Below, piece after piece: positions 1 to 62,782 of a stretch of DNA of 64,000 bases. The notes under the pieces were generated by a model that saw nothing but the letters and a program-made list of their open reading frames with translations, was not told the origin of the DNA and did not search any database. Both the position numbers and the translations under genes were made by a program. Numbering within the stretch: the first letter of the stretch is position 1; each line of letters starts with the position of its first letter. This DNA comes from Oopsacas minuta (Eukaryota; Animalia; Porifera): positions 732,184 through 796,183 of the forward strand of contig JAKMXF010000144.1 of the NCBI GenBank assembly GCA_024704765.1, given 5' to 3'.

Positions 1-859
1 ATCTAACCTCATCCACCTTATCTACACCACAATTAATGCGTTCACTATTTATGCCATCAAAAATGCTGAAATAGAACTGACATAGATTTGAGAATGTTTC
101 GCAAGTCTATTTCTGGCCACCACATTGAATTAATCATGAGTTAATTTCGAATAGGCCCATCTGTTAGGTATTGACTTGGCTTCACAAACATTTGAATAAA
201 TACCCCACTCACTTTGATACCTTGTTTGTTTTTCACAATTCATTCAACTTCCTACTTCTTCAACACCTGTAGTACCACTCCTGAGTGTATTACTCTAATT
301 GCTTTTACCAGGAAATTCTGAGGTATTTTATAGCTACGATTATTAGTGGGACACTTTACATTCACATATCACCTTAGTTGAATTGCAAATATTGTATAAT
401 TATAATTTTATGTACACATCATATACGTGTTACATTATGAAATCATTATAAGATTACATAGTGAATTTTTTCTAATATATCGCACTGAGAATGTGACGTC
501 ATCACGTTTATGTATCGGTAAAGACAGATTCAGTGTATTTTCTCAATGTGATTCGAATAGAAAACCTACATAAGGGGTGTTCAAAAGCTACGTGACGCTT
601 CATAGGGTACTACAGGTAGTTGTAGCTAAGTGATATGATAGCAATACTGCTTGAAGGGTGTTGAATTTGTAGAAATTTCCGCTACAACTTCATTAGATAA
701 AGTGTGAATATGCCAAAATTATCAAATTTCATAAGAATATCTACGATTCCTTGGGTATTGGGTATAAATACTAATCCTCTTAAATCTTAACAATATAACA
801 CTTTTTAATAATCTCCCAGTTTGATTGTATAGGATCAGTGAAACCAGGTACTAGTTAGC

Positions 860-1348
860 ATGTCCGGTATTGCACTAGGTCGCCTCAGAGAAGAGAGGAA
901 AGCTTGGCGGAAAGACCATCCATTCGGTTTCATCGCAAGACCAACAAAAGCACCAGATGGGGATGGATCTCTCAATTTAATGTTATGGGAGTGTGCAATT
1001 CCAGGTAAGCAAGGAACTGACTGGGAAGATGGCTTGTTCAAAATTAAAATGACATTCAAAGACGACTACCCTTCCTCGCCCCCTAAATGCAAATTCGATC
1101 CCCCACTCTTCCATCCAAACGTCTACCCGTCCGGTACGGTATGTCTCTCGCTGCTCGACGAAGACAAAGACTGGAAGCCTGCTGTAACTATAAAACAGAT
1201 TCTGCTTGGAATACAAGAGTTATTGGACTCACCCAACATTAAAGATCCCGCCCAGGCTGAAGCTTATGTTGTGTTCACACAGAACAAAGAAGATTATACC
1301 CGAAGAATAAAGGAACAAGCCAAGAAGTTCAAACCTCTGCCTTCATAA
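860..1348 (+). CDS. UBE2I: SUMO-conjugating enzyme UBC9, intronless
   Basis: [25 protein letters not shown]-terminus, [13 protein letters not shown] active site, [13 protein letters not shown]-terminal motif; 162 aa. Confidence 0.97.
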
Positions 1349-1784
1349 GTTATTTTTAGTACTGCCTCTATGTACTTCTCTCTGTCCTTAATTGATAGTT
1401 GTAAAGTTGAAATAATGATCACGCTCGCGTTCCACCTTTTTGCATTCGGTATATGTCTCCTAATGCTAATCCCCATTCGATTCCTTATCAAATGGAAATT
1501 TAGATATAATTGTTAGTATAATTTAATTACTGTAAGTACAATGCTAATGTATCTAATATTAGTGTTTAATGTGTTAATCAGCTGGGAAGAGGTTCAATGT
1601 GTTAGATTTAGTAATTTACATAAACATATACGGTATAGTGAATTATACAAAGGGCTATGTTACTATATTGTCCAATTCTAATTCATATATGTTTAATGCT
1701 GTAGTAATAGCTAAAAGTTGGTAGAATTGTCTATACTGTGATTTTGTGTATCATATACACACACACAATATATTCGTAATTAGA

Positions 1785-3019
1785 ATGGCAAACTTAAGAG
1801 TAGATGAGAGAGACGAGTTTCTCTCGCATCTAGAATCTGTTCGTTCGAAATTATAGGTAGATTCTATCGAGCTCGCAGACTTCTCCAAGAGAGAGAAGAA
1901 GTTCTGTTATTTCAGCTGGATGAGATAAAGGATTCTTACAAACAGCAACTTGTTAGAAATGAACAGAGAAGAGAGCTTTTAGCTACCAGAGAAAATTTAC
2001 AATCCTTTCTTAAAGGTAATCAAAATCAAGAGACTCTACTTGCAATGCTAGCTCCTCTTGAAGATAAACTGAGAGAAATGGAAGGGGGAATAGAAGAACT
2101 ACAAGTAATTAAACTGAATTGGAGCAGGGAAGGAGAACTAGAAAGTTTATTAAAAGACATAGGTACCTTCAAATTGAGCAAAGCGATAGATAGAGATTAT
2201 ACTAGAAAGGGCATTCCTGTACTTACAGCTTGTAAATACAGATTAAAGACTACTCAGTTCGGAGAATTTAATTGGCCCACTGTTATTGCAATACAACCTA
2301 AAACTGACAACTTATACATAGCTGATACTTTTAATCACCGTGTACAAGTTTTCAATAAATCTTGTGAATTTGTCATGTCTTTTTCAACTTTAATGGATCA
2401 CCCTATTGGCATTTGTTTTCACGGAAGTAAGATACTTGTTACTCAATTCGTCGGTAATATCGTCAATATGTATACAACAGATGGTGAACTAGTAATGTCA
2501 ATAGGAAGTAGAGGAGAGAAAGAACTTGAATTTGAACATCCTTTGAGAATCTGTATTTCTGAATGCACGACTAAGATTTATATTTGCGATTACGGAAATG
2601 ATAGAGTTCAGGTTTTAAATAGTGACTTCACGTTTAATTCTTTTATGTTTCGGACCAAGCCTAGAGACGTTAAAGCTAGAGGAGATCAGATATATATTCT
2701 CAATGAGAATAATCCCTGCCTTCATGTGTACAACTATGAACATCAGTTAATTAGAGATTTGATTTCTTTTGGCAATGAAACGAGTCAAATTTATAGTTCT
2801 GATCATTTCTGTATTGATCACAATTCAAACATTCTGATTTCAGATAGAAAAAATTGTTGTGTGGTTGTGTTTAACAAAATCGGCAACATCATTCACAAAT
2901 TCGGGAGAAGAGGAAGCAAACCTGGCGATTTGATCGATCCACGAGGGATTGTAATAGATAGAGAAGGCAGGATAATAGTAGCATCTCTAAATCCTGACAA
3001 TTGTATACAGTTCTTTTGA
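1785..3019 (+). CDS. Coiled-coil + NHL-repeat protein (TRIM-NHL-like, no RING or B-box); one 1-nt frameshift near 1845
   Basis: ORF 2045-3019 has NHL repeats (YIADTFNHRVQVF, ICDYGNDRVQV, PRGIVIDREGRIIVA). ATG at 1785 gives MANLRVDERDEFLSHLESVR, and after a -1 shift EIIGRFYRARRLLQEREE..., collinear with the paralog at 30159. Confidence 0.8.
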
Positions 3020-4229: not shown

Positions 4230-4519
4230 CTAATGGACTTTACTCGTATACATGTAGGGTAAATTTGATATTATTATTTTTAAGATTACATTTTCAGATT
4301 TGAGTATTCTGTTTACTTTATATGATTAACCATTTGCTTACAGCTGAGTACTGTTTTTTATCCTGATTATCTTTGCAACGAATCAGAAACTACGAAATAC
4401 AATGTTACTTCGTTGATATGAACACCAACGGACAGTCAAATTTTGTTTGCCTTATCTGGAGTAATACCATTTGGATATCCATTGTAGGGACCTGATTATT
4501 TGCGAATATTTGTTCGCCT

Positions 4520-4728: not shown

Positions 4729-7700
4729 ATGGCGTTCAGAGAAGTAGAAACAGATCCACTCCTACATCCCACTAATTACAGTGACCAATCTGATCAACCT
4801 GTAGAAGATAACGTAATACAGGATAAGCTGGACTCTTTAGATGTTAAGCGAGAAGAATATGAGTATCTAATTGGCCAGGGAGTAAAGCTTCTGGAAAAGC
4901 CGAATATATTAGCAAAGAAACTAAAGATAGATATAGATAAAGCCACAAAGATTATTCAAACTATCAAATCGTTTCAAAGTGATTCTCATGGTTCACAAGC
5001 TAATCTCATGTCTGATTTTAGGAAAATAGCTAAGTGTTTGAAAGAAAATCCTGATGAAGACGATCCTGAAGATTTATCGTTACTCTGTGGGGTTGAAGTA
5101 GGTATTGTTTATAGATTTTTTGAATCACAACCACTTGGCGCTAACCAAAAGGCTGCAATAAAGGAGAAATTTAATATAGGGAATTCTGTCCCTGATATTG
5201 CGAAGTTGTTAGGGCTGTCAAATCGAAAAGTTAAGAAACATGTAGAAAGCACATTTCTAACATTTACTTGTGAAGAAGGGGAGAGAAGTTTGCAAATCAT
5301 ACAGAAATATAAAAGTATTGAAATTCCTAAACTACGTGAATCGGTTATTTCTAATGACCTCAAATTTCGAAATGATATTTATAAAATTCCAGAAAAGGAA
5401 AAAAAATTGTAAAAGAATATTTTCAAAAATTTGCAGAGTCGAGATCTTTCTTTGATTGTGATATGAAACTAACCATGGATGATATTTCTCTAATTAACCA
5501 GAGTAATAACTGTGATAACATAGAACATATCAGTAATAGAATACAAAAAGTAGAGACAGTTATAAGAGAATATCTTGAACAATACCAACCAAACCAGGTA
5601 GTTACAAATTTCTGTACAGAATTGCAAAAAGAGAAAATTCAACAAGTTGTAACTGATTTTGGAGAAGATAAACTAACTTTTCATTCTTATAGAATGATAA
5701 TTTCTAACTCATTCGAAAGCATGATAGATGATGCGAAAGAAAATGAAACTCCTAGGGATGTGTTCAGGCAGGTGTTACCGCTAGCTTTCTATTATCTTAA
5801 ATGCAGTCTCCCTTTCGAAGATATCACACAAATAATAGCCAATGCTAGCAATCTCATACTCACTACTCACGATCTGTTCCATATAATATTTCAATTATCA
5901 GAACCAGTTTTAAGAGGTTTCTGCATTGAACATTACTCATTCAGTAATTCTGTTCCTTTCTATTACCCGATACTACCCAGTAAATCATTGAAACAAAAAG
6001 ACACAAAATTTGCTATCTGTAAAGAGCTATGGTATTCTCTGCAGCAGTTCAATGGATTGGTTTCATTCGGACTGGGGAGAGCTGGTTGGAATCCTGTTGG
6101 AAAATCTTATTTACTCGATTTTATCTTTGAGACAGATTTTGTTAAAGGAAATCCTCAAAACAGTACTTTTCATTTCAATTCTATTGATATTCAAATGACT
6201 AAAAATTTGTTTGGAAAAATGAAAAATACATCTGATGCTGAATCTATCAAATGGGCTTATATTGACTGTCATAGACAAACCAATCATACAATCCTTAAAA
6301 TCATTTGTCAACACTTGGATATTGCGTTAGTTCATATAACAAATGATGATTTTATGAATAACAAGTCAGAATTAAATTCAGATATTAAACGTTTATTGGG
6401 ATCCGTTAAACACTGTTATTATCTTGTCAGAGATTACAAAGATACTAAAGTAAAAATAGAAAGTGTCCAGCGTGGGTCTACATATGAAAAGTATTATTTC
6501 ATTCCTAATCTGACCAGACAAGACACTAATAGCCATTCTGTTAGAAAATCTTTGAAAGAACTCGGCTACGAAATATTACATCTCAAAAATCCAAAAGTTG
6601 ATCGGAAGTGGATTTCTAGACTCCGTGATGCCGAAGGATGATTATCAACTAGTAGATATTCTATCGGATAAACGTTTAATTAAACGAATCACGGATCAAG
6701 TTTGTCGTCAAGCTTTAACTTGTAGTCAAGTTGAGGTCTCCTTTTTGAACTATTATCCACTGTTCGTTAACTTTATGCGGTTTTACTACGCAGCTCTCTA
6801 CGAAACAGATCAAGGCACTATTGATAATCTTAACATGGAAAGTGCTCAGCTTGCAAAGAAATTGCGTAATGCTAAAATCAGAAATGTTGTGCACGATTTC
6901 AAGGAGATTATCTCTAGAGAGAATTCAGCATTACTTTTGTGGAAACTGTCACAAGAACTTTCAATTCTCTCAAAGCAACACTCACAGTCTGGCAATGATA
7001 CTCACGTACAAAAGAGCTCTAGATACAGTCTGGAAATATTTTGGAGAGAAGCTTTACTTTCGATTAAGTATGGAAGCTTCATTGATGAAGGAAGTAAGCG
7101 ATTTAGAGAAGATTTCGCATTTAGTTATGGCAATCATGTAGAAAGAGGAGAACCATTTGAGTTGATCGATGGTGATAATCTTCGTTTTTTTAGTAAAGAA
7201 ATTGACAATATGTTATTCGATTTATATCAGAAACAGATACAAGACTTAGAAAAAATAAATGAAGGCAAACATGTATTGATAAAGCAGGCCCCGATTGTGG
7301 TGAGTATATTTGGACCACAAAGCTCTGGAAAATCAACGTTATTAAACTACTGCTTTGGCTGTAAGTTCCTAACCAGTGCTGGCAGGTGTACCAGAGGAAT
7401 TTATGCTTCTCTCTCCCAATTGAGCAGAACTGTTGCCCTCACCAACCAGTTCCTTATCTTAGATACGGAGGGTTTAGATGGAATTGAGAGATCGAACGTC
7501 AGCGACAAATCTCATATTCATTTTGACAGGACGATGGTTCTATTCTGCCTTGCTGTATCTCAAGTTGTAATTATAAATGTGAAAGGAGATATTGGTAGTG
7601 AAATGCAGAATTTGTTACAAATATGTGCATATTCTTTGAACAAACTGAATGTTAGGAAAGTAGCAGCTCCCAAAATATTCTTTGTTTTGAATCAACAAGC

Positions 7701-22990: not shown

Positions 22991-24050
22991 TACGCTGGTC
23001 AACAAGCAATTTGTCGCCTAAGATGTTAGATCAGTTTCCAGGTATATTGACCCAGGAAATCTGAAAATGGCATCGGCTTATCCGAATTGGCTCTAGTTTT
23101 TGCGATACCTAATATTAAATTTGGCCCGATAAGTATAAAAATAGTGAAGATATACTACACATAAATTTCTTCACATTAATAGTGGCATGGTGTTTCAGTG
23201 GTGACATTCAACATTTTATGCTTCCAAGTGTAAAATTTGAATTATTGAAATTTGTAGTTTTTGAATGTAACTATTAACTGCAAAACCGAAAATCGGGAAG
23301 TAGAATTTTATCATTATAGCTACTCCGTATAAATACATTGATTATTGTCAAAACAATTATTCGGTTAAAAGTAATAATATTAAAAAGAATACTAAACTTG
23401 TTTATTGAAGAACATCTAAAAATAGTCTCTTATTTGATTTTCTGTTATGAGATATCAGAGGGCAATCTCGCTGGAGGCTCCAACAGTAATCTGCCATCAT
23501 GTGGGTATCCCACCTGCCTTGATATCTCTCTTCAATGACCTTGATGTCCTGATGAAACCTTTCCCCCTGTTCTTCACTTAGATCCCCAAGGTTTTCAGGG
23601 AAACGATCCAGGTGGCTAAATAGATAGTGAACCTTGATGCTCATGTTGACATCTAAATATTTAAATTTGTGAACATGTCATTGACCAAATCTATGTACCT
23701 AAGAAGTTATTTACTACAAAAACAAATGCACACCACGCAGAAGATTCTAAATTAGTCATGGATTGGACGAAACCAGAGTTTCTTATGAGACTGCGGATCT
23801 GAGGACCATCAAAGATCCCTGCTTTCAGTTTTTCATTGCTCATTCCTGGGAATGATCTGCAAATGTACTTGAAACAGGGGCCGTCTTTATCTAGAGATTT
23901 TATGAACTGCTTCATTCAACCCAACTTGATGTGGAGGGGTGGAAGAATGATTTTTTTCTCTAGAAACCAATGGTTCATACAGAATGTTTGCTTCTCCAAC
24001 TGTTAGATGAGTTCTCAAGGGCCAATGCCTTAGTTAAATGTATTTGGGCA
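22991..24050 (-). mobile_element. Degenerate Chapaev-like (CMC) DNA transposon, transposase remnant
   Basis: PPLHIKLG*MKQFIKSL, GIFDGPQIR, HYLFSHLDRFPENLGDLSEEQGERFHQD, MMADYCW; broken by stops and frameshifts. Boundaries approximate. Confidence 0.7.
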
Positions 24051-24087: not shown

Positions 24088-24509
24088 TAAAAGTAAACAA
24101 ATATACACAAAATGTTATTTACAATATCATATTCGGGCTCAGCATACTTGAATACCCCAGGATAGTCGTTGAAAGTACGAATCTACCACAATGTTAAAAT
24201 TTGTTTACTTTACGTTCCTAAAAGTAAACAATTATTCACAATATGTTATTTACAATATCATATTCGGACTCAGGAGACTCGATTACCCCTGTATAACCGT
24301 TGAAGGTATGAATCTATCACAATGTTAAAATTTGTTTACTTTGTGTTCCTAAAAGTAAACAAATATTCAGAATATGTTATTTACAATATCGTATTCGGGC
24401 TCAGCATACTTGAATACCCCAGTATAGCCTTTGAAAGCATGATTCTGCCACAATTTTGAAATTTGTTTACTTTGTGTTCGTAAAAGTAAACAGATATTCA
24501 CAATATGTT
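24088..24509. repeat. Tandem array, 131-bp period (3.2 units)
   Basis: taaaagtaaaca starts at 24088, 24219, 24350 and 24481. Confidence 0.9.
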
Positions 24510-24840
24510 GCTAGAAACTACTGGAAATTACTGGAGACTGCTAGAAACCGGTGGAAGCTGGTGGAAACTGTTGGAAACTGTCCGAAACTGCTGGAAACTG
24601 TGCGAAACTGTGCGAAACTGTCCGAAACTGCTGGAAATTGTGGGAAACTGCTGGAAATTGTGGGAAACTGTGCGAAACTGCTGGAAACTGTGCGAAACTG
24701 CGCGAAACTGCTGGAAACTGTGCGAAACTGTGAGAAATTGCTGGAAACTGTGGGAAACTGCTGGAAACTGTCGAAACTGCTGGAAACTGTGCGAAACTGC
24801 TGGAAACTGTGGGAAACTGTGCGAAATTGCTTGGAATTAG
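24510..24840. repeat. 10-bp minisatellite (NNNGAAACTG), ~33 units
   Basis: ctggaaactg / tgcgaaactg / tgggaaactg variants in tandem. Confidence 0.92.
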
Positions 24841-24861
24841 TTCCTTTTTAACTACTAGACT

Positions 24862-25020
24862 GGGATACTCGATTACACTGAGTCCGGTATGATATTGTAA
24901 ACAACATATTGTGAAGGTTTGTTTACTTTTAAGTACATAAAGTAAATAAATTTCAAAATTGTGTTTGATTCATACTTTCAACGACTATCCTGGGGTTCTC
25001 GATTATGCTGAGTCCGAACA
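24862..25020. repeat. Inverted copies of the 131-bp unit
   Basis: The reverse complement reads taaaagtaaacaaaccttcacaatatgtt... and ...ccccaggatagtcgttgaaagtatgaatc. Confidence 0.85.
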
Positions 25021-49998: not shown

Positions 49999-52900
49999 GT
50001 AAAAAGAAGATAATATATTCATGGAGATACGTCATGATCTTGTCTACTGGAAAGTGTTTACAGCTTTCCTGTATCAGTTTTCTCTCTTCCTCACTTACAA
50101 CTTCCTGAAACTCATTTTTCAGAGATGAGAAAGGAATCTATAAAGACATTAGTAGTAAATTAAAAGAGTGATGTTGAAAGTGAATGTAGATATTACAAGT
50201 AATCTAAGAGAGTTTTTGTTTGTGTATGGTTAATTGAAGAATCGTTAGAGGCTACAATATTGTATCCAATTTGTATTTGCATACAATATGGTACAAAAGC
50301 TGCACATTGCAAGCAAGCAAAGCGTACTTGTCAAAATCATATGATACATACCTGTCCTTGGAGAGAGAGCTTCCGAGCTTTCTCTATAGATAGAAGGTTC
50401 CTGAAGCTGATTACATGTTTCAGACATAACTCTACATTTGCCTGTAAATAATTTATGTAATTATTAAGATATTTAACATCAAGAAAAGGAAATCAGCAAT
50501 ATATACCCTTCTGCTCTGTAGAGTACCAGCTCCATAAGAATCATGAGAATACTGTAAAACATCAGTAAGATAAGAAGACAATTTCTGTTCTGGATCTCCT
50601 CCTGCTGATGATAAGAATCTAATCACTACATCTAGTACTAGGAGGACATCACTAACTGCTTCAAGTGAGTCTAAATCTTCTTGTATAGCTTTCCATACTA
50701 TCATTCTCACTTCAGTCTGGAAGAAATAGTTATGAGATTAATACAGAATCTAATCCACGAGAATATGGATCAGTCCCACTTGCAATGTTAATGAACTACG
50801 AGACACTCACTCACTTGAGTGAGTGTCGCGAATACTTCTAATTAGATTGGATCATGTGTATATTTAATATGAATAGAAACACACGTGTATTCATTCTAAC
50901 ATACCAAATGTACAAAACAGACGAACCAATAACAACAAACAGAATTTAAAACACACAAGTACAAATGACTTTACAAATAATATAAGAAAATTTCTGACCT
51001 GTTGAACTTTGTGTCGCACCTGTTCGAACACTCCCAGGTTGTAAGCCTCACGAGTGTACTCGAAGCGGAGATGTTCTGCTAGAATAAGAGGTTTGTTCTG
51101 AATGAATTGTTCCATTAATTGCTGTTCTACTCCCTCAAAATCATAAGTCACTTGACTTCCTTGTCCGAGAGCTAGTGAGTAGTGAGCATGTGACAGTAGT
51201 AGAGGCTGCAGATGTTCCTCGTACTCAATCACATGACTCATATTCAATTCACGGAGTGGTATCTTGTCACTACGGGACCTAATACAATGAGAATAATATG
51301 AGACATGTCTATAGACATATCATTCAATAGAATGATGCATACCACTTCACTCTGTCTCTGTAGGCGTGTACAAATGAGTTGTGTATCAGCACTAGATAGT
51401 CAGTGAGTGAGGTGATCAGCACTCCCCTTCCTGTTGAGGAAGGGAGCAGGTAAGCTAGAGAAGTAGCAGGAGTTATTTCTTGTTGTTCTAGAGATTCTTC
51501 CATTGTGAGACGTCCATTCTTCTTCACATCTTCTCCAATCATACTCCATGCTGTAGCAAGACTCTCCACTAGTCTAGCTAATTCTTCTGATTCATGTTTG
51601 TTATCTAAAAGAAATATAATCGCGATGATTATCACTGAATCAATCAGGTAAATATTGATATTATATTTTACCAGTTTTCATTCTATTTAAGAAATCTTTA
51701 ATAGAAGTATTAGCAGCTTCTCTCCTATCCAATCTGTGTAGGAACTTATCTCCTACTCGTCTCTGTAGCTGTATAATGTCTGGTAAGTAACGAGTCACGA
51801 ATAATTTGTTTTCTTCTTTCAAGAACTTGTCTACTAACGGACACTTGTTTTTGGTATTTAAATCAGCTGTACTGAAGCTCTGAGAGAAATGCTCCAGACT
51901 CACAATAGTTCTGTAACGCCATAGATGAGGTAACGGGTTGTTTGGTTCTGGTTCATCTCTCTCGAATAGAATTCTAAAGATAGAGGTGAATTCATGTAAA
52001 TTCAATTAATCTATATACGAGTACGTAGTGTTGAAACTCAATATTTTGGGGTATGTGTGTGTTTATTGTTTGTCAGGTTTGAAGTATAATATTATAAACA
52101 GGACAAAAATTTCATTATCTCATTGGGGTAATCGAGCATACTTACATGTTATGAATATTTATTGCCATATAATTCATGAATTAATCTTTTCACACTTTTG
52201 ACTGATAACACTGGGCAACATCAAATTTATTCCTCAAATGAAAATATATTACCTAGACTAACTTTGGGATGCTGATTCCAAATCTGAAATCAGAATTGGT
52301 CTATCACGTCAGGATTTCGAGATATGAAAATTCACGAAATTCGGATTTTGCATTGATTGGCACTATATTATAAGGTACTATACAGTACAAGTTAGGCCTA
52401 TTGTACAATTTTCTTTCCCAGCGAATTGTTGGTCAACAATGCATATTATGTACGGTTAATATTAACATTATTTTGTAAATGTAATGTTCTATCTTTTGAC
52501 AATTAATGCATTCTTGAGTGTTCTTGGCCATGGCTATAAGGAGGGGTTATTTAGCCTACTTGCGGGTGGATTGTAGACTGTATCGATAAACCAACAACAT
52601 TACTGTTTCGCAGAATTTTTAGTTTGTAACTGATTGTGTATTTAAGCTTTTTGTTTACAATGAATACGAGCAGAAGACAATGCACGAACTGGGATATTTG
52701 TTGGCCCCCAAATACGTGATTTGATGCGTGACCCAGTATTTCCATCCAAGCTTAATTCAATTGAATTGGAAGCCTGGAATGCATTTGTACAGATTGTACA
52801 AAATTTTCTTGGAAACTATAGGGCAGAAAATTACTCGGAACTAGTGGACAATTTGCTGGAATCATACCGCAAAATGGGCTGCAGAATGTCGCTTAAACTG

Positions 52901-55900
52901 CATTTTCTTCATTCACACTTGGACTTTTTCCCATCAAACCTGGGTGATGTGAGCAACGAACATGGAGAAAGATTTCACCAAGACATCTCTGTGATGAAAT
53001 CGCGGTATAGAGGTCGATTTAACCCAAACATGATGGGGGACTACTGCTGGTTTCTCCAGCGTGAAACTGACACTGAACATGCTCGAAAGAGCAAGTGTAT
53101 AAAGCACTTTTGAGAGGATACAATGTTATTTTTGTCTGGTTTAATCATCCTGAGTTGTGTTAAATTGTGCAAAATGATAATTTTGTTATTTTCACTAGCA
53201 ATCACTGTGTTTATTACATGTAATGTTTTGTTCTGCACAGCCAAAATTAGCCAAAATGACAATTACGGGTTGTTGTGTACATAAGTCATATCTCAAAAAC
53301 GTGACGTGTTAGAAAATATCTAAGGCCAGAATTGGATTCAGCATGGCCATATTAGTCTAGGTAAACTTGAAACGAGCAAGGAATAAAAAATAAGTTGTAA
53401 AATGTTGTCTAGTGTAATTCAAGATGATGCTAGAGAATTCGTATCATTGGTATTATATGGTACTTGGGTAGTAGGTTCACATTTCGAATATAGATCACCA
53501 TGTGTAGCATATGGGAAATCATTATTCACACCTAGAGAATTCATTTCAATGGTACAGCTTATACTGGGTAATCGAGTATGCTAATTCCAGATACAATAGA
53601 AGCCACTTAATCGGGACAAGTCGGGAGTGAGGTTTTGTCCGATCATCCGTACATCCTGTTAACCGATGTAAATATTTACTATTAGAAAACTTCTCATATA
53701 CAAATTGTTGTTCTCCTGTAAATTGTTCTATCAAATAAAATTTGATGTAGAAGTGTTAATTCCACAAGAGCACGAAATGTTCGCAATCCACGTAGCGGGA
53801 GCAACCATAGCGCTCGTATACTAAGAATCGCGCTGTATTGACCTGAGTAAGTGATTGTTAATAATCTTCTTCTCACTCAGCACCTGTTCCATCTGTCTCT
53901 GTACATCTGTGTTTAGAGAGCTGAGTATAGGTTGAATGAATTTCTTATCAAATTCTCTCTCCCATTGCTCTCTTAATTCACGCTGTGTTAAATCAGTAGT
54001 AATGCCACCTGTAATATAATCGAATAATAAATCACAAATATACTAAGACTGTTAAACCACTCACATGGCTCTTCTACTCTTTCCATTACAGATTTTATGA
54101 TCAGATGGATAAAGAAGATAACTTCCTCAAAGTTCTTTCCTGTCAGTCTAGTTAATGATCTAATGTCTCTCTCTAGATGTAGATAGAAGAAGTTGGGAAG
54201 ATCTCTAGGATCATTTAGTCCTCCTTTTATGAGAGAAGGAAGTAATGGACTCCTGTCTGTAGGATGTTTGGAACAAGATGACCAGATGAAGGAGATGTCC
54301 ATTAGGATACGAATAATCTTAACTGAAGCAGGAGATAGTGACCTATATAATTAGTATATGACCATGTAATCTAAAATATGTTAATTAAATCCATATTTCT
54401 AACCGCATCAACCCATTGAAGGCTAACTTGTACATACCTAGTGGTCTGAATAAGCCCCCCCCCCTTATTGATTTTTAGATTTTCTTCCAACCCCTCCCCG
54501 TTTTTTCGGACACCTAGAGTTGCTGGTTATAGTGAAGTGGTTAGAAAAATCCTAAATAAATTGTCAGTGATCCGGATTAATAACTTCTCTTAGAAATGTA
54601 TATATAATTTGTATTAAACTAAATTCGCTCGATATGCATAAACTCTCTATATTATGCGATTTATATGCAATATTTTTGATCCACTTTGGTTTACGTTTAG
54701 CATAAGCGTCCTTGACAGTATATATCCATGAAGTTGACAATACAAATGTGTTGTAAAGTATAAACAACCTTTCCCCACTTGGTACATCAATACTATCATT
54801 AGCGTTTGCTAACAAATATCCTAATTTTGTTTCGTCTTTGTTTATGTTAAGTATAACATTCTGAGATTCCAGTACTTCATTAATTCCTCCAATTTTACAT
54901 CCACAATCTGGACAAATAGACACCTCTGTAGGGTTGGTACACTAAATAAAATATTGTATGTAATGTTAAGGTTCAAACACAAAATTATGCAGTATATACT
55001 AAATTATAAAGTGATTACAATCATAGCATAATATCTATGTGCTGAACTAAGTTCTACTAAGTTGCATTCTATTGCAGCTTCTATAGCTATAAGGTGGTGT
55101 CCTAATGTAATAGAGGATATCCTTGCGGCGGTATAAATGCTAGTGGTCATACTGACACGACAATTCGTACACATAGATACATTTTAGGGTGGATAGACAT
55201 TTTATTGATGATTAATCATACTGTCGAAGATCCGAATCTCCAAGATGTGGGATGCTCCTTAAACTGGGCACCATTTATCCAAAAGGTTGAAATTTTATTT
55301 GATCTTTTTCAGATAATTCCCCTAGTGATAGAGTTGTCTTTGGTTGTAGTACTTGAAGTCCGTTTATTTGTAACAACAATCTGTTAAACATTATTCAAAT
55401 GCATCTTGATATTTAATATCACAGTAGAACGCATGGGACCCGGCACTTCGTGCCTCGAATTTAGCAGAGTATAAAATTGCATAATGAATTAACAAATATA
55501 TATTTTAACTATTTGTTTACTTTATATTCATAAAAACAACAAAGATTTACATATGAGAAACTTAAAATTCAGATTCAGCGTACATTGTTACCCCATTGTA
55601 GCCGTTAAGAGCAATTCCCTACCTATATTCTGAAATTTCAACTATTTTTTTACTTTATATTCATAAAAAACCACAAAAAATACTAATTCAAAAGTGTGAA
55701 AATCAGATTCTGCACATCCGATATATTTAGTCAAGTTTATTCAATTCTGTACACTTTCTTGGTAAACACGATAAATACAATATTATGCGACATCTGAGAA
55801 TTGAGAAATTCAAATTCACTACAACATTCCATAAATCCTTTCCTTGACAACGGGAAAATAAACACGCACCACAATATTTGAGGTTTGATAATATAGATTT

Positions 55901-58900
55901 GTATTTTAAGTAATCAGGATTGAATTTAACCATTGTACATTCGGGAAATTGCAAAAGATTCAATGTCAAACCATTCCAATAATTGTGAATTATACAAAAG
56001 AGTCCTAGCATCCACTTTTTATTGCAAGAATATTGAATATTATGCAGAACAACGATGAAATTTGTAAATTATTTGCAATTACAAAGGAGCGCGCTCCTTC
56101 AAAAAATGTAGCGAAGCTCCACCTTCCGCTCCTGAATCATAATTCGTGCGCGCAACAGGTCCCGCTACTTCAAAATAGGAGCGCGACCGGGAGCGACGTT
56201 CTTGGGGAGCGCTCCTTTAATGCTCTGATTAAGCGAAAACGTATCACGAATTTAAAAGTTGAGTGTAAATTGTATCTTACCCCTCCAATTAAGTAAGGAT
56301 GACCTTTAGGGCATCTATGCCATCCTCTAGATGCAGATAATACAGACATAACATCTTTAGCAGATATTAATGGATCATCCATCATAGTAGGAAATAATCT
56401 GTCCTGTAGAGTCTGAGGGTTCTCGTATATCAAAGCAATAGGTAGGAACAGCTTGTGATATTTCTTACAAGATAGCATAACAGCTACATGGTATATTAGT
56501 CTGATTAGGAATAATTCATGATTACTGGAAGTATCTGTGAGTTTAAGATTTGGTAGATTTCCATCTCCAAAGTTGTTTGTTGTTATCTGAATAGCTAAAT
56601 TGTATAGTACTGGGTTGATTTTCTTCAGGTCAGAATTCACAAAATTTGTGAGTGTAGCATATTTCTAAAACAATGTATCCGATAATATGTGACAGATAAT
56701 CGTTAAATTATAACATTTATTAATGGCGAATTTTACAGTTTTGCTGTCAAGGTTTGAAGTCAAATTACTAATTCCTCAATCAATACTGTGCAACAATAAA
56801 GATATACAAACTGGATGGAATTTAGAATAAATTTAACAACTATGAATTAAAGACTACTTACACTCTTTTCAAATATTTTATTATCTCCACTCTGCTGTAT
56901 CGAAGATAAAAGTTGTTGAAAGATAGAATAAATGAAGTATTCTGGTGCCTCAGATTTCTAAAGAGCAGTATTTTGATAGATTATCGCGAATATCTTTACT
57001 AGATCACTTCACGAAGAAGTAAGGCACCCGCACGACACTGATTGTCTGTCGTCGTTTAGGAGCATTCGGCAATTCATACGTAAACAGTATGCCACGACGA
57101 TAAGTTTGCACTGATTATGATGCCAGGAATGGAGGGTCTAGCACATAAGCTATAAGTAAGGGGACTGAAGTTTCAAACCTGAACAGTTTCCCATATAATT
57201 TGTGTGAATATTAATAGAAATTATATGAATATTGCTATCCCAAAAAGATTAAAGTACCAACTAATAATTATAACTAAAAGGCTCACAGTTTTAGGTTTGA
57301 ATAATTGCAAGATAGTATCATTTTTGTTTATCTTAATGGCTTGTTCAACTGCTTTAATCATTCTTGTATATTCTTCTCTGTATATCAAAAAATAATCAGG
57401 AATCTAAACAATAAAATGTAATGAAAGCATACTACCTCGGTATTTCTAACTATTACCACACAAATATATCTCAGTATAGATTATAGGCGTCGTAAACCAC
57501 CCGGATACCCAGAAATGTCCGAATGGCCCCGAGGACTATCTGGAACTCAGGGTGTTACCCTCGGACCTATCATATACTTCATACAATAGATATTTGGTGC
57601 TATAATATCAAACTTTCATTATACTCAATCTAAAATGTCCTCTAAAGTACAGAAATTCAGCTCTCCACACCTCAAAATGTTGTATTTGGTGTCTAATAAC
57701 GGCCCGAATTGCCAGGTTCACGATCCTGGCGAAAAGCCTCAGGGCGACCCAAAGTTGAGGATAATTTTACGAAGCCCAGGTATATATTAATGGAAGGAAT
57801 CAAACACATTATCCAAGTACCTGTTTTTACGAAAATGTATCATATTGTAGAATGATACAGTTTCGTAAAAGAATATTTCTGGGGTAATAGTCAGAGGTAA
57901 ACTATATTTTCTAACTGTAATAAGTACCTCCATATTGTCCGTTATACAATCTGGTAAAATCCAGGAAAATTTTGTATTTGAATTAAGAAAATTTATTGTA
58001 TCACTTCCCAATTGATGATATATATTCTTGAATAGGAGTAAACGGATATCTGCATGTCCTTTCAGCAAAGAGATTTCCTGGAAGCTAGTAACCAGTCCCA
58101 TTCTCTTTCCATGATCAGGTAGTTGTGTGTTTGTATTATTAAGGTTAAAACATTCAACAATCCATTTAGATACGGACACACAGATAAATCTTAGTGTAGC
58201 TATCTTCTCTAACAATTCATAAGATATTTCTAGCTGAACATTTCGCATACTAGTAATCTGGGATGTTAGAAAGTTGAGTTTATTTTCATATTTTTCACTG
58301 TTATATCGTTGATGAATAGAATCCTAAATATCAGTATATTACAAATAAAATTTGTTAGGTATGTAATAACTGTTTGAAATGTGATACGGGTGATAACATA
58401 TAATATCGAATATATTATAGAAAATAGTGACTCCAGGTGCGCCGGTACTCATCTACACCAAAAATCACCACATCCTATATTTAATATTTGAAAAATTACC
58501 TCAATTGAATGAGCTATCAATAGGTACAATTCTCTCTTCATTAAGTGATTTTTTAGATTACTCGCCACATTCGTCAAATAATTCGAAATGTATTCCTTAA
58601 ACACATCTTCCCTACAAGTAAACAAGATCAATATTAAGTATCCTGATAGCATATTGAATATAAACATCATTGTAGTTTTCTAATTGTAAATTATAGTATA
58701 TTGTTATAGTAGTTTAGTTATAATATGTATGAAGGCATCAAAATTGAGGGGAGTGATTCATGCACTATAGATCGAATATGTAAATATAGCAAAGATAGAA
58801 GGTTACCTATATCTAATCAGCAGCTGTAGTAAATAGGCTCCGAAAGCTAGAGAAGGCTCAACTCCATCTTTAGTAAAAATATTAATTTTTCCTTTGTCAT

Positions 58901-61900
58901 AACTCTTTTTACTTACACTCTTTTCATTGGGTATAACAAACTCCATAAGGAGATTACTGAGTTCATTATTTCCATCTTCTAACTCTATAGATTTGAATGT
59001 TAGATTAGTCAGGATACTGATGAAGAATCTTGTAGCTCTAATCTGGAATTCTTGCATGTCAAGTGCAGTTAATCTAGACCTGTACGTATAATATTTTAAA
59101 GTAAATAGTTGGTAGCAATGAATTGAATATTTTTAGCAATCCTTACCCTGAAACCTTTTTGATCTTCTTCACACTCTTAGATAAGATCTCAAGTATATGG
59201 TTAATTACTTTTACTGAAGAAAAATTTGGACTTTCTCCAAAGAGCTATTTAGTGAAATAAAAGAAAAGATGAATCCATAAATCTGAGATTTAGTTAGTCA
59301 CCAGAGGAAATTTTACAAAAAGAAGCACAAATTTGGTAACCTGAGCTGGGTGGTGCTAAGTTGCTTAATATGGATCAGAATGGGAGTATTTTCTGGCCTG
59401 CCTACGCGGCCCAAAAAGATTTTTGGCCAAATCCTTGACCTGTTTTGGATCACTAATTGATATTCAGAGCAAATTAAGCTCTAACTTTAATTTGGATTAT
59501 AGCAATATTGTGAATACTTTTGACGAAGTTAAACCGTAGTTTCTCCTGGAATAATATTGTTTTTGTGAGCTTCTTGCGAGGCCGAAATATTCATGCATGC
59601 TTTTTGAGGGCTGAATAATACAATCGCACGGCTGGCGCGGTTAGAAATTTCGGCCCGCTTGCAACTCTGGGACTGAGGAATAATGTGATAAACATTTGTA
59701 TTGATAATTTTCTAATTTAAACAATTGAATTAATCAACTTACCAAAAACAATTTGTGTATCTTGGATTCTATAACCTTGAACCAAACACCAAGAGCACAA
59801 TGAGTAATAAATAATTGAACTGCCACAATACGATTCCACCTAGACCTACATATAACACACACTATAATAATTCTATAAATGATGTAAAGTCAACAGACCG
59901 GCAGTGCAGCTAGCTGTTTTAAGAGGATTACAATTACCCCTACCCTGTCATAGGAAACTCATGTATAGTACAATTTTGAATTGGCCCAAAAGGCAAAAAC
60001 ATTGATTTGTATTGCATAGACGTAGGATGATAGTGTGAGCTGCCAGGACAATGGCTCAGGTCTTAATATAGATTTAGGCAACCCGCGGACCCTAAGTATG
60101 TATAGGTTAAATTTTGCACACCCAATGTATTAAAGTATATAACAAAGGGCTTTCCCTCTATTGATATTTAGGTCACAAACAGCTGTATTATATTTATTTA
60201 AAGTAGCTGTACCTCAGATCCAGTTTGTAATTTTCATTAGATGAATTTCTGTTTAAGCACAATCCCTTCTCCACTATACCATGCCACTGATTAACTTCAC
60301 TAACATATTGTTCAGCTAGCTCCCTACTAGCTGTACGCTCTTTCTTGTGTGAACACAGATTAATTATCAGTTCTAACAAAATTAGTTCGAGACAGTTCAT
60401 CTTGTTTCTGTTGTCAACATTTTTCACCAACTTTGAGAAAATTTGATTGAATTTGCCTGCCAAACTGTTTTCTAATTGAAAAGCTTGTTGCAATAAATCA
60501 AATAACTGCTTTGAGTCTTCATAAGCACAATGAATTCTTGGAATGGATATTTTATCGCTCAGCTTCGTACCTCCTTCATCATGTGAAGTACAGTTTAGCA
60601 GGACATTTTCATAGACCTATTATAATATAAAATCTAGTAAGAGAGTGTGGAAACTGCGTTATTATACAGGAACAAATTTCATAAAAATCTTTGATTAACA
60701 ATATTTGACAGATTAGTAATTTGGAAATTTTCAGATTAGGCTTTGTAGCTGGCGGATAATTTACTGTTGAATTTTGTGTATAAACATATCTCGTGTTGAA
60801 TTTCGTATTTGCTTTATCTCTTCATGTACAGATGTCCGATATATCGACCTGTTATGGGAAGCTCTGCGTCAAAGTGTTTGTGTTTCGTTAGTGTCAACAC
60901 ACAGCATACTTATGCTGTACATTTCTAGTAAGAACTTATATAACTCTAACGACATTAAAAGTGACCTACCTCATATTTATCATCATCAATTGGAAATAGA
61001 TTCATAAATATGAAATCTTTCAAATATAAATGCACTAACTGAAGGGATTCGTCCCTTTTCGGCATGTGCTTCATAAGTTTCTTCCCAATAGGAGTCTTAG
61101 CGAAAAGTTCCTCAAAACGAGTCCAAATGTCATCAGAAGCATCAGCTATAAGATATGCTTCATGTAAAAATAATTCATAATATACATTTCTGCTCTACCC
61201 GACCTGACTGGTTATTCTGACGATCAGACTCATTACAAGTACAAAAGCCATATTTTCAGATTTCAATTATCACGGTCAATCCAAATTGTTAGAGGTTACC
61301 AGACTGTTCGAGAGCTCTTACCTGTTTCAGCAATAGGAACACAGGTAATACAAATTTACGCTCCATTCTAAATTGTATTAAGGAATTATGCTAATATTAT
61401 ACATTCTATCTCGTTGGGATGCTACGACCTTTTGTATATGTTGAGTGGCATTACTAACATATTTCTCTAAAATGTGTATTAAATGGGATTTCCGTTTTTA
61501 TAGGTCAGACTGGTATCAAATAATTCTCATTCCCACAAATGTTCTAAAAATGCAGAATTCAATCTACTATTAAGTAAACTTTCTTATGAATAATATATGA
61601 TAAGATGTACTATTCTAACCTGATAAGATTTTTGTTTCTTTCAAAAGCTGAGATAAACACTGATTAATGAACCAAGAGAAAGGGAAGTGAGCTTTAAAGT
61701 ACTGTCCACCAGCTCCATCACTTAACACAGGAACTTTCCTTCTAGGTAGTAGTGTGTTTGGAGAGATTGTGTCTTTGTATTGTAACACAAGCAGACGCTC
61801 ATCTCTGAATATATCATGCCAGAGATTGAATAAACATTCTGGTACTTCTTCATTATAGAGAGCTAGCTCTAGATTTCCATTTCTATCTATACAAGCAATC

Positions 61901-62782
61901 AACTCTGCTACTAGAGGAGTAATAGTACTGTTAATACGGAGATTTACAGCTTTACGGAATGTTCCAGATGATTGTATGTCTTCTACACAATTAGCTGTCT
62001 GTAGTAACCAGTCTGTATTGGTATCAATTGAAGAATTAGATTGATCTCTCAACAGTATAGTCAATCTTTGACATAAAGTTCGATGAAGTCAACTATAAAT
62101 GAGGGTAGAGAATGTAGTTATATAAGAATGAGGTTTAAAAAATTTATATTATTAAATCTCAATTGTTGTCTGTTAGTCTGTTTGTTTGGCCGTTGTCAAG
62201 AAATGCTATTTTGAAATTGATGCATAACTATGTATTTATCGTGTTTATCAAGGAAGTAAATAGAATTCAATAAAACTTCACTAAATATATCGAACATGCT
62301 GAATCCGATTTTCACATTTTTGGATTAATCATATGTAAATTTATTGTTGTTTTTATGAATATAAAGTGAACAAATTAGCAAAATCTCAAAATTTAGGGGA
62401 GATACTTACCCTCAACGGCTAGAAAGGGGGTTGATCTTACAAAATATTGTAATAACACATATGCCATATACTGATATTAGTGAATTACATTGTTCTAAAT
62501 ATATCTATATCATAATACTCAAAGGGGCGGTCAATTTAGAGAATAATGGATACCCCGAGGCGCATTGCGCCGAATTCATCGCGAAGCGACGAGCCAAAGC
62601 TTATCTTATTAAAAATGAAACGGGACCTAACATTTGACAATCTCATACTTACAACTGTACTTGTTTGTAGTTAAGAGAAGATCCAAATGTTGAATTCGAT
62701 CAATAATACGATCATCACTGCAATGATCATCCTCTAATCTTGAAACTGTTAACTGAATACAATTTTTCAATCTTTCTTTTAT
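49755..62782 (-). CDS. RNF213: RNF213 (mysterin)-like giant E3, 3' part (E3 module, RZ finger, CTD); further 5' exons upstream or outside the window
   Basis: Phase-consistent GT-AG exons: 62782-62653, 62092-61620 (1-nt gap at 62067-62069), 61145-60970, 60616-60213, 59839-59743, 59244-59147, 59079-58807, 58611-58500, 58257-57928, 57403-57287, 56957-56862, 56664-56281, 54941-54769, then about nine more to the stop at 49757-49755. Peptides GTFRKAV..IDRNGNLEL, FPFSW, YLKDF, RCPKGH..CPDC, LPDIIQLQR, YLLP..GRG, FLSSAGGDP, QFPQQI..W match RNF213 as I recall it. Confidence 0.88.
52209..53414 (+). mobile_element. Internally deleted Chapaev3-like transposon in an RNF213 intron
   Basis: CACTGGGCAACA / TGTTGTCTAGTG termini; TAA duplicated on both sides; subterminal inverted tacctagactaa..atgctga..cca; transposase remnant GIFVGPQIR..HFLHSHLDFFPSNLGDVSNEHGERFHQD..MMGDYCW. 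Confidence 0.82.
55425..55790 (-). mobile_element. Helitron-like element in an RNF213 intron
   Basis: The minus strand carries gctgaatctgaatttt..catatgtaaat..ttgtttttatgaatataaagtaaacaaat (shared with 62300-62380) and a GCACGAAGTGC hairpin near the end. Confidence 0.5.
62143..62603 (+). mobile_element. Near-complete non-autonomous Helitron-like element in an RNF213 intron
   Basis: tatattattaaatc start, gtctgtt microsatellite, CGCGAAGCG hairpin about 12 nt before the end; homologous to 46915 and 25031. Confidence 0.6.

What the first reader, a model, noticed from the sequence alone, without database searches (positions are those of the whole stretch)
54840..56313. RZ finger keeps the Zn ligands and catalytic Cys but has Glu at the catalytic His position
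Seen: splicing 56281 to 54941 gives CPKGHPYLIGG|CTNPTEVSICPDCGCKIGGINEVL. Against human CPNGHPCSVGECGRPMEQSICIDCHAPIGGIDHKP (recalled), the alignment has no gaps. The ligands C4505/H4509/C4525/C4528 and nucleophile C4516 are conserved, but H4537, the proposed partner of the catalytic Cys, is GAA (Glu). His to Glu needs two base changes, so a single miscall is unlikely. With the RING also missing, this implies altered transthiolation chemistry or substrate, or a catalytically dead scaffold.
Basis: partly seen in the sequence, partly recalled or inferred. Interest (0 to 1): 0.72.

Follow-up and report, generated by a model that had tools for sequence, protein, structure and literature searches.

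The report
RNF213 RZ finger with Glu for His
An expressed sponge-type copy of the giant immune ubiquitin ligase RNF213 keeps the zinc ligands and catalytic cysteine of its RZ finger but has glutamate where mammals need a histidine; its closest relatives mostly carry tyrosine there, so the histidine was lost before this gene arose.

Summary
On the minus strand, exon A (56664-56281) ends in CPKGHPYLIGG. A GT..AG intron follows. Exon B starts at 54941 with CTNPTEVSICPDCGCKIGGINE.

- **Domain:** both halves hit Pfam ZnF_RZ-type.
- **Alignment:** both align without gaps to mouse RNF213, with C4451, H4455, C4462, C4471 and C4474 kept and Glu at H4483 (human H4537).
- **Reads:** contigs of four runs from one sample all carry GAA. 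So does a second haplotype. One RNA-like run holds the spliced junction.

Glu is unique in my sample. Of 93 full-length RNF213-type fingers, 82 have His, 8 Tyr, and Ala, Gly and Ser occur once each.

The framing "His to Glu" is wrong for this gene. It sits in a lineage-specific expansion (earlier notes of this scan say glass sponge; not tested here). In 12 related loci the position is Tyr in 9, His in 2 and Arg in 1, and it is the same within each species pair. Codon context (AAT TAT GTA CTG versus AAT GAA GTA CTG) points to Tyr to Glu.

This copy also changes two other near-invariant neighbours: Tyr(-2) to His, and Gly to Thr after the nucleophile. dN/dS is about 0.3, as in its relatives.

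It is a divergent but maintained paralogue, and its catalytic state is untested. The scan had noted Tyr-type copies elsewhere in this genome.

The parts
56281..56664 (-). Exon A of the RNF213-like gene. It ends with the first half of the RZ finger (WHRCPKGHPYLIGG).
   Evidence: Open frame from acceptor AG 56666-56665 to donor GT 56280-56279. 29 bits to mouse RNF213 residues 4356-4460. 24 related exon-level ORFs at 55-73% identity.
56281..56313 (-). RZ finger, first half. It holds Zn ligands Cys1 (56313-56311) and His5 (56301-56299).
   Evidence: Pfam PF20173 profile positions 8-23. Aligned to mouse C4451 and H4455.
56317..56319 (-). His codon (CAT) two residues before the first Zn Cys. Relatives have Tyr or Phe here.
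   Evidence: Column count over 86 RNF213-type fingers: Y 77, F 7, W 1, T 1, His 0. All sponge-clade relatives have WY.
54942..56280 (-). Intron (GT..AG, phase 0) that splits the RZ finger. It holds a very high-copy repeat at about 55450-55970.
   Evidence: Sequence. Spliced contig in run X4 and summed contig depths up to about 96,000 over 55448-55578. Relatives have an intron at the same codon.
54769..54941 (-). Exon B: second half of the RZ finger plus the linker, up to a donor AG|GT at 54769/54768.
   Evidence: Translation. Pfam PF20173 profile positions 25-52, 27.3 bits. Mouse 4462-4510. The RNA-like contig covers 54767-54941. Relatives' exons end at the same ...GER.
54939..54941 (-). Codon of the nucleophile Cys (position 12, mouse C4462, human C4516).
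   Evidence: Gapless alignment. Invariant in 86 of 86 fingers.
54936..54938 (-). Thr codon directly after the nucleophile Cys, at a position that is otherwise Gly.
   Evidence: Gly in 86 of 86 full-length fingers and in all 12 related loci.
54903..54914 (-). Zn ligands Cys21 (54914-54912) and Cys24 (54905-54903).
   Evidence: Aligned to mouse C4471 and C4474. Invariant.
54876..54878 (-). GAA, Glu at position 33, the place of the general-base His (mouse H4483, human H4537).
   Evidence: No variant in any of four runs. Glu in 0 of 86 plus 7 full-length fingers and 0 of 12 related loci.
50352..54344 (-). Downstream exons of the C-terminal (E2-docking) region, collinear with RNF213 homologues: about 54344-54039, 53991-53845, 51981-51664, 51602-51357, 51250-50999, 50719-50552 and 50456-50352.
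   Evidence: tblastn of P0010, P0011, P0020 and P0029 against the window.
61588..62079 (-). Upstream exon of the E3 module. The gene runs off the right end of the window.
   Evidence: tblastn, 33% identity to P0010 and P0029.

Best explanation
This is a real, spliced and probably expressed paralogue of RNF213, from a large lineage-specific expansion. Earlier notes of this scan call the genome a glass sponge, which I did not test. Its RZ finger keeps the four Zn ligands and the nucleophile Cys, and the E2-docking C-terminal exons are present. The general-base position holds Glu. This Glu arose on the gene's own branch from Tyr, which is the usual residue in this clade, and not directly from His. 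It arose together with changes at two other almost invariant neighbours: Tyr(-2) to His, and Gly13 to Thr. Inferred mechanism: the protein still accepts ubiquitin from an E2 as a thioester on the conserved Cys, a step that does not need the His. It then discharges it with altered rate or nucleophile preference, using the Glu carboxylate or another residue in place of the imidazole. Shown here: the anatomy, the rarity of Glu, the Tyr background, purifying selection of ordinary strength, and the spliced contig. Inferred only: every statement about catalysis.
For: Survey of 86 full-length RNF213-type fingers: H 78, Y 6, A 1, G 1, E 0; seven more with CxC spacing give H 4, Y 2, S 1. In the exon A tree the window lies inside a starred clade (96/91) of 22 exon-level relatives. 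Members with recovered exon B are Tyr (L007, L008, L009, L010, L011/L012, L013) or His (L001, L003, nested deep in the clade). The sister group is Tyr (L004, L005). Codon context: window GGA GGA ATT AAT GAA GTA CTG against L004 GGA GGA GTT AAT TAT GTA CTG. The residue is the same within low-dS pairs from different assemblies: L007/L008 Y/Y at dS 0.35, L010/L013 Y/Y at dS 0.25, L001/L003 H/H at dS 0.40. The position is therefore held, not drifting. The nucleophile Cys and all Zn ligands are kept in all 13 copies. dN/dS of the window against relatives is 0.25-0.37, against a median of 0.35 among the relatives. C-terminal exons are collinear and open. On the role of the His: PMC12075652 reports that H4483A keeps residual activity, below one tenth.
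Against: No assay or 3D model of this finger was possible, so activity is unknown. A Tyr or Glu may not act as a base in this site. ZNFX1 H1881N abolishes the RZ route (bioRxiv 10.1101/2025.09.05.674436), so a non-His finger could be inactive in discharge. The window copy has the longest departures from consensus next to the nucleophile (Gly13 to Thr, 0 of 86) and a long end branch (0.28 against a median of 0.15; 0.93 against 0.53), which also fits relaxed constraint on catalysis. No orthologue of this copy was found (best 73% identity), so conservation of the Glu itself cannot be shown. Pairwise dN/dS averages over both lineages and 164 codons, with dS near 1. Run X4 is RNA-like only by its depth pattern; its kind is not on record.
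Confidence: 0.55

Rival explanations
1. Pseudo-E3: the finger is kept as a zinc-folded scaffold, perhaps still loadable with ubiquitin. Productive transfer was lost when the His was lost. This copy is drifting further under relaxed constraint on catalysis while the rest of the giant protein (sensor, ATPase or scaffold role) is maintained.
For: His is needed for full activity in mouse RNF213 and in ZNFX1 (PMC12075652; bioRxiv 10.1101/2025.09.05.674436). The window copy alone changes three near-invariant positions around the nucleophile: Y(-2)H, G13T and position 33. It has long end branches. The second haplotype carries 3 amino-acid changes and 1 silent change within 175 bases of exon B. No RING motif was found. 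Unchecked notes of this scan report a copy with Cys to Phe plus His to Tyr elsewhere in the genome.
Against: The nucleophile Cys, which is not a Zn ligand, is kept in all 13 copies examined. That is unexpected if thioester chemistry were dispensable. Tyr is conserved within species pairs. dN/dS over the two exons is no higher than in relatives. The haplotype changes lie in the poorly conserved linker, not in the finger.
Confidence: 0.3
2. Decaying pseudogene or assembly artefact: the Glu is one of many random changes in a dead copy, or a consensus error.
For: The gene belongs to a family in birth-and-death turnover, according to unchecked notes. Only the C-terminal quarter is visible in the window.
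Against: GAA is present in contigs of all four runs and in both haplotypes. A spliced contig joins the exact exon ends. All recognised exons are open and collinear. dN/dS is about 0.3.
Confidence: 0.05
3. Relocated base: the new His two residues before the first Zn Cys (Tyr to His, unique to this copy) takes over the general-base role. Glu33 then supports it, as in a Cys/His/acid arrangement.
For: His at -2 occurs in 0 of 86 other fingers and in none of the sponge relatives. It appears in the same copy that gained an acidic residue at position 33, which could be a coupled change.
Against: No structural model was made, so proximity of position -2 to Cys12 is unknown. Two coincident changes on a long branch are also expected by chance. 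No precedent was found in the papers read.
Confidence: 0.1

Closest known systems
RZ finger of mammalian RNF213 (mouse C4451/H4455/C4471/C4474 Zn site, C4462 nucleophile, H4483 base; human C4516/H4537)
   Same: Same domain (Pfam PF20173). Same gapless spacing C-x3-H-x6-C-x8-C-x2-C-x8-X. Same position in the protein, between the E3 shell and the E2-docking C-terminal domain. The conserved GG precedes position 33.
   Different: Glu instead of the general-base His. Thr instead of the invariant Gly after the nucleophile. His instead of Tyr at -2. No RING motif found upstream. The finger is split by a phase-0 intron just before the nucleophile Cys codon.
Tyr-type RZ fingers of RNF213 paralogues (sponge-clade loci L004-L013; bivalve proteins P0082, P0092, P0095, P0098, P0105; P0020, P0029)
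   Same: They lack the His and keep the Zn ligands and nucleophile Cys. These are the window's nearest relatives, with the same intron position and almost the same flanking codons.
   Different: They carry Tyr, conserved within species pairs. The window carries Glu and further changes next to the nucleophile. No function has been reported for Tyr-type fingers in the papers I read.
RZ finger of ZNFX1 (human C1860/H1881)
   Same: Same fold family and same Cys/His logic. H1881N abolishes the RZ-dependent route (bioRxiv 10.1101/2025.09.05.674436).
   Different: ZNFX1 is a helicase with its own E2-binding Z-RING. The window gene is RNF213-like along its whole visible length.
MYCBP2 RCR and RBR catalytic zinc domains
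   Same: Zinc-binding transthiolation domains with a free His near the catalytic Cys acting as general base, as discussed in PMC12075652.
   Different: Unrelated folds. This is a comparison of mechanism only. No membership is claimed.

Membership tests
RZ-type zinc finger (Pfam PF20173) | Match to the family profile | tested here: met
   Exon B: 27.3 bits (cut-off 27), E 2.7e-06, profile positions 25-52. Exon A: 17.2 bits, profile positions 8-23. The halves were scored apart because the spliced protein has no reference.
RZ-type zinc finger (Pfam PF20173) | CHCC zinc ligands at the canonical spacing | tested here: met
   C1, H5, C21 and C24 align without gaps to mouse C4451, H4455, C4471 and C4474. 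All four are invariant in 86 fingers.
RZ-type zinc finger (Pfam PF20173) | Non-ligand nucleophile Cys at position 12 | tested here: met
   TGT at 54941-54939 aligns to mouse C4462.
Cys/His-dyad transthiolating RZ ligase (as defined in PMC12075652) | General-base His at position 33 (mouse H4483, human H4537, ZNFX1 H1881) | tested here: not met
   GAA (Glu) at 54878-54876, present in all reads laid.
Cys/His-dyad transthiolating RZ ligase (as defined in PMC12075652) | E2-dependent thioester formation and ubiquitin discharge | not testable with these tools
   Needs biochemistry.
RNF213 / mysterin | Collinear similarity of the E3 module and C-terminal E2-docking domain | tested here: met
   phmmer to mouse and human RNF213 chains. 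tblastn of four homologues gives ordered hits from 62079 to 50352.
RNF213 / mysterin | RING domain in the E3 module | tested here: inconclusive
   No C3HC4-type motif in any minus-strand open frame, and no Pfam RING hit in the 10 exon-sized frames scanned. Not every frame between 61.6 and 56.7 kb was scanned, and a RING split by introns would be missed. Many invertebrate homologues also lack RING Pfam hits.
RNF213 / mysterin | Dynein-like six-AAA core | not testable with these tools
   It lies upstream of the window's right end.

The most novel reading that the evidence does not exclude
RZ fingers come in a second natural class that works without the histidine. Tyr-type fingers are conserved between species in sponge and bivalve RNF213 expansions. 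This Glu-type finger is a further derivative with a remodelled active site (Glu33, His at -2, Thr13). The class would carry out different chemistry from the mammalian Cys/His dyad, for example another acceptor nucleophile, a relay to another Cys, or a long-lived thioester.
Probability: 0.2. Interest if true: 0.65.

Novelty: new variant of a known kind. Interest (0 to 1): 0.38.

Why it matters
The RZ finger is a recently defined E3 ligase class. It has two human members, both central to cell-autonomous immunity, and its Cys/His dyad is presented as conserved. The data here show that the His is replaced in about one in nine of the RNF213-type fingers sampled. The replacement is usually Tyr, it is conserved within species pairs, and the nucleophile Cys is always kept. 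That gives enzymologists natural test cases (Tyr, Glu, Arg) for what the second dyad residue really does, and whether invertebrate RNF213 expansions contain ligases with other chemistry or pseudo-ligases. The single Glu copy on its own is a small point, because it is one fast-evolving member of a large family.

Tried and rejected
1. A word search with exon B alone found nothing. The length filter excludes full-length proteins, and exon B frames are too short to have been called as genes, so the blank says nothing.

2. The representative search with exon A returned mostly exon-level fragments. I used the few long hits, and then a region search with the full-length hemichordate protein P0011, to build the survey.

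3. The exon B counterpart of L006 (P0003) was not found by pattern or tblastn, so its state is unknown. P0006 reads through a short in-frame intron into a degenerate finger with C-x7-C and no GG, and I left it out of the counts.

4. The exon B-only tree is nearly unresolved at 55 columns. I use it only to show that the nearest rows are all Tyr-type.

5. A Pfam scan of ten other exon-sized frames gave only chance-level hits.

6. Two literature searches found no paper on natural variation at this His or on sponge RNF213.

7. I considered a sequencing error and rejected it.

8. I considered a nearby downstream His as a substitute and rejected it. Exon B holds no His at all, whereas mouse has a second one at 4486.

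9. I did not fold or search the spliced finger. No structure tool returns coordinates, so distances could not have been measured in any case.
Full report
**What is there**

The right quarter of the window, from about 49.8 kb to the end, holds the 3' part of an RNF213-like gene on the minus strand.

- Exon A runs from 56664 to 56281 and ends ...SASRGWHRCPKGHPYLIGG, followed by GT.
- After a 1339-base intron that ends in AG at 54943-54942, exon B starts at 54941 with CTNPTEVSICPDCGCKIGGINEVLES. It runs to a donor at 54769/54768.
- Pfam ZnF_RZ-type (PF20173) matches profile positions 8-23 on exon A and 25-52 on exon B. The two pieces are therefore the halves of one RZ finger.

Instead I aligned each exon to the chains of solved RNF213 structures.

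- Exon A aligns to mouse residues 4356-4460.
- Exon B residue 1 falls on Cys4462 and residue 22 on His4483, without gaps.
- The Zn ligands (mouse C4451, H4455, C4471, C4474) and the nucleophile (C4462; human C4516 according to bioRxiv 10.1101/2021.05.10.443411) are kept.
- The place of His4483 (human H4537, by the same offset of 54) is GAA, at 54878-54876.

**Is it a sequencing or annotation artefact?**

No. I laid contigs of four public runs, all from one sample and one study, on 54400-58300.

- No run shows another letter at 54876-54878.
- Two versions of exon B exist. The window's version is in X2. A second version is in X1 and X4, with changes at 54828 (silent), 54844 and 54853 (Ile to Lys), 54867 (Glu to Asp three residues after position 33) and 56281 (silent).
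- Both versions keep GAA.
- X1 to X3 cover the introns evenly and look like DNA. X4 has zero depth over several introns.
- X4 holds a 240-base contig that joins 54941 to 56282, with one letter between that is the silent variant at 56281. This is the proposed splice.
- The kind of these runs is not on record, so "RNA" is my inference from the depth pattern. The sample is probably the source of the assembly.

**What the literature says about the residue**

- Mouse His4483 lies next to Cys4462 in the model. H4483A lowers autoubiquitination more than 10-fold, and the authors call Cys4462/His4483 a catalytic dyad, with the His as general base for the acceptor nucleophile (PMC12075652).
- In ZNFX1 the equivalent H1881N abolishes the RZ-dependent route (bioRxiv 10.1101/2025.09.05.674436).
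- The His is described as highly conserved. I found no paper on natural exceptions.

**How often is it not His?**

I searched the representative library with exon A, which does not contain the site and so cannot bias the result. I then ran a region search with the full-length hemichordate protein P0011.

Of 86 fingers with canonical spacing, position 33 is:

| Residue | Count |
|---|---|
| His | 78 |
| Tyr | 6 |
| Ala | 1 |
| Gly | 1 |
| Glu | 0 |

Seven more fingers with a CxC knuckle give His 4, Tyr 2 and Ser 1. Of the eight Tyr fingers, five are bivalve paralogues (Mytilus, Mercenaria, Ruditapes), two are P0020 and P0029 (source not shown) and one is a bird protein.

Glu is therefore unique to the window in this sample, but "not His" is not rare.

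**The gene's own relatives**

- A word search with exon A found 24 exon-level ORFs at 55-73% identity, all from unnamed ENA assemblies.
- No orthologue closer than 73% was found.
- In the exon A tree the window lies in a starred clade (96/91) of 22 such rows, as one arm of an unresolved fork.

I fetched the contigs of twelve relatives and read the exon that follows. In every case the intron sits at the same codon.

| Position 33 | Loci |
|---|---|
| Tyr | L004, L005, L007, L008, L009, L010, L011, L012, L013 |
| His | L001, L003 |
| Arg | L002 |

- All members of the window's clade other than the nested L001/L003 pair are Tyr, and so is the sister group (L004, L005).
- Codons make the origin plain. 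The window reads GGA GGA ATT AAT GAA GTA CTG, and L004 reads GGA GGA GVT... more precisely GGA GGA GTT AAT TAT GTA CTG.
- The simplest history is therefore Tyr (TAT) to Glu (GAA) on the window's own branch. That takes two changes, presumably through Asp.
- The fewest changes on the exon B tree is three for four states, so each non-Tyr state arose once.
- Within low-dS pairs from different assemblies the residue is the same: L007/L008 Tyr, L010/L013 Tyr, L001/L003 His, with dS 0.25-0.40. The position is held by selection in each paralogue line.
- The nucleophile Cys and the Zn ligands are kept in all 13 copies.

**What else is odd in this copy**

Against the 86 fingers, the window differs at two further near-invariant places.

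- The residue after the nucleophile is Thr. It is Gly in 86 of 86, and in all 12 related loci.
- The residue two before the first Zn Cys is His. The others have Tyr 77, Phe 7, and no His.
- Position 11 is Gly, where the others mostly have Glu or Asp.
- The end branch is long: 0.28 against a median of 0.15 on exon A, and 0.93 against 0.53 on exon B.
- Exon B holds no His that could stand in downstream.

**Is the gene maintained?**

- Pairwise dN/dS over 164 codons of the two exons is 0.25-0.37 for the window against nine relatives. The median among the relatives is 0.35.
- The exon alignments were made apart. Only their codon columns were pooled for the counts, and no joined sequence was printed, saved or sent anywhere.
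- dS is 0.75-1.1, so the figures are rough.
- Downstream exons of the E2-docking C-terminal region are open and collinear with four homologues, down to 50352.
- No RING-type motif occurs in any minus-strand frame, and no Pfam RING was hit in the frames scanned.

**Reading**

This is not a His-type finger that lost its base. It is a divergent member of a Tyr-type clade in which the His was already gone, and Tyr at this place is a recurrent, conserved state.

My best guess rests on three observations: the non-ligand Cys is kept everywhere, the E2-docking domain is present, and selection is of ordinary strength. On that basis I think these proteins still form the ubiquitin thioester but discharge it differently. 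Here Glu, or possibly the new His at -2, would stand in for the imidazole.

The main rival is a pseudo-E3 with relaxed constraint on the catalytic loop. That reading fits the three unusual substitutions and the long branch. Nothing I could run decides between them.

**Limits**

- The organism was not determined here. "Glass sponge" comes from earlier notes of this scan.
- Those notes also report Tyr-type and Cys-to-Phe copies elsewhere in this genome. I confirmed Tyr-type fingers only in relatives from other assemblies.

Noticed in passing
window 55317-56233 (peak 55448-55971): The intron that splits the RZ finger holds a very high-copy repeat. Summed contig depth reaches about 96,000 in DNA-like runs, against about 100-170 beside it, with many alternative joints at 55542. 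It looks like a family of short interspersed or MITE-like elements.
   Followed up: no
window 54828-54867 and 56255-56281: A second version of the locus, either a haplotype or a very recent duplicate, is present in the same sample. It has three amino-acid changes (Glu to Asp, and Ile to Lys twice) and one silent change in 175 bases of exon B. The spliced RNA-like contig belongs to this version.
   Followed up: partly
window 56347 and 56643: RNA-like contigs of run X4 leave the window sequence at these points and continue with paralogue-like sequence. One reads ...IGESGKW on the minus strand. Several family members therefore seem to be transcribed, and they share words in the assembly graph.
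   Followed up: no
window 52664-53110 (+) and 23405-23915 (-): Two related open frames have a transposase-like tail (...GERFHQDI...YQGRW/YRGRF...DYCW...). The first sits inside an intron of the RNF213-like gene.
   Followed up: no
P0062 (Pseudopipra pipra RNF213 isoform X2), residue 33 of its RZ finger: This vertebrate RNF213 is annotated with Tyr at the general-base position (CHLPIGGVRY). It is the only vertebrate exception among about 65 in the sample. It could be real or an annotation or sequencing error.
   Followed up: no
L002 8707 (ENA ERZ20067936 ptg000511l): A more distant member of the same sponge-type family has Arg (CGC) at position 33, with the Zn ligands and nucleophile Cys intact.
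   Followed up: no
L003 (ENA ERZ26869290 ctg346820) 276-2924 (-) and 6001-6252 (+): Two RNF213-like exon A copies face each other within 6 kb of a contig end. This fits dense, rearranged arrays of this family.
   Followed up: no
window 24435-24969, both strands: A long tandem array encodes SFQQFRTVS-like repeats that are open in several frames.
   Followed up: no
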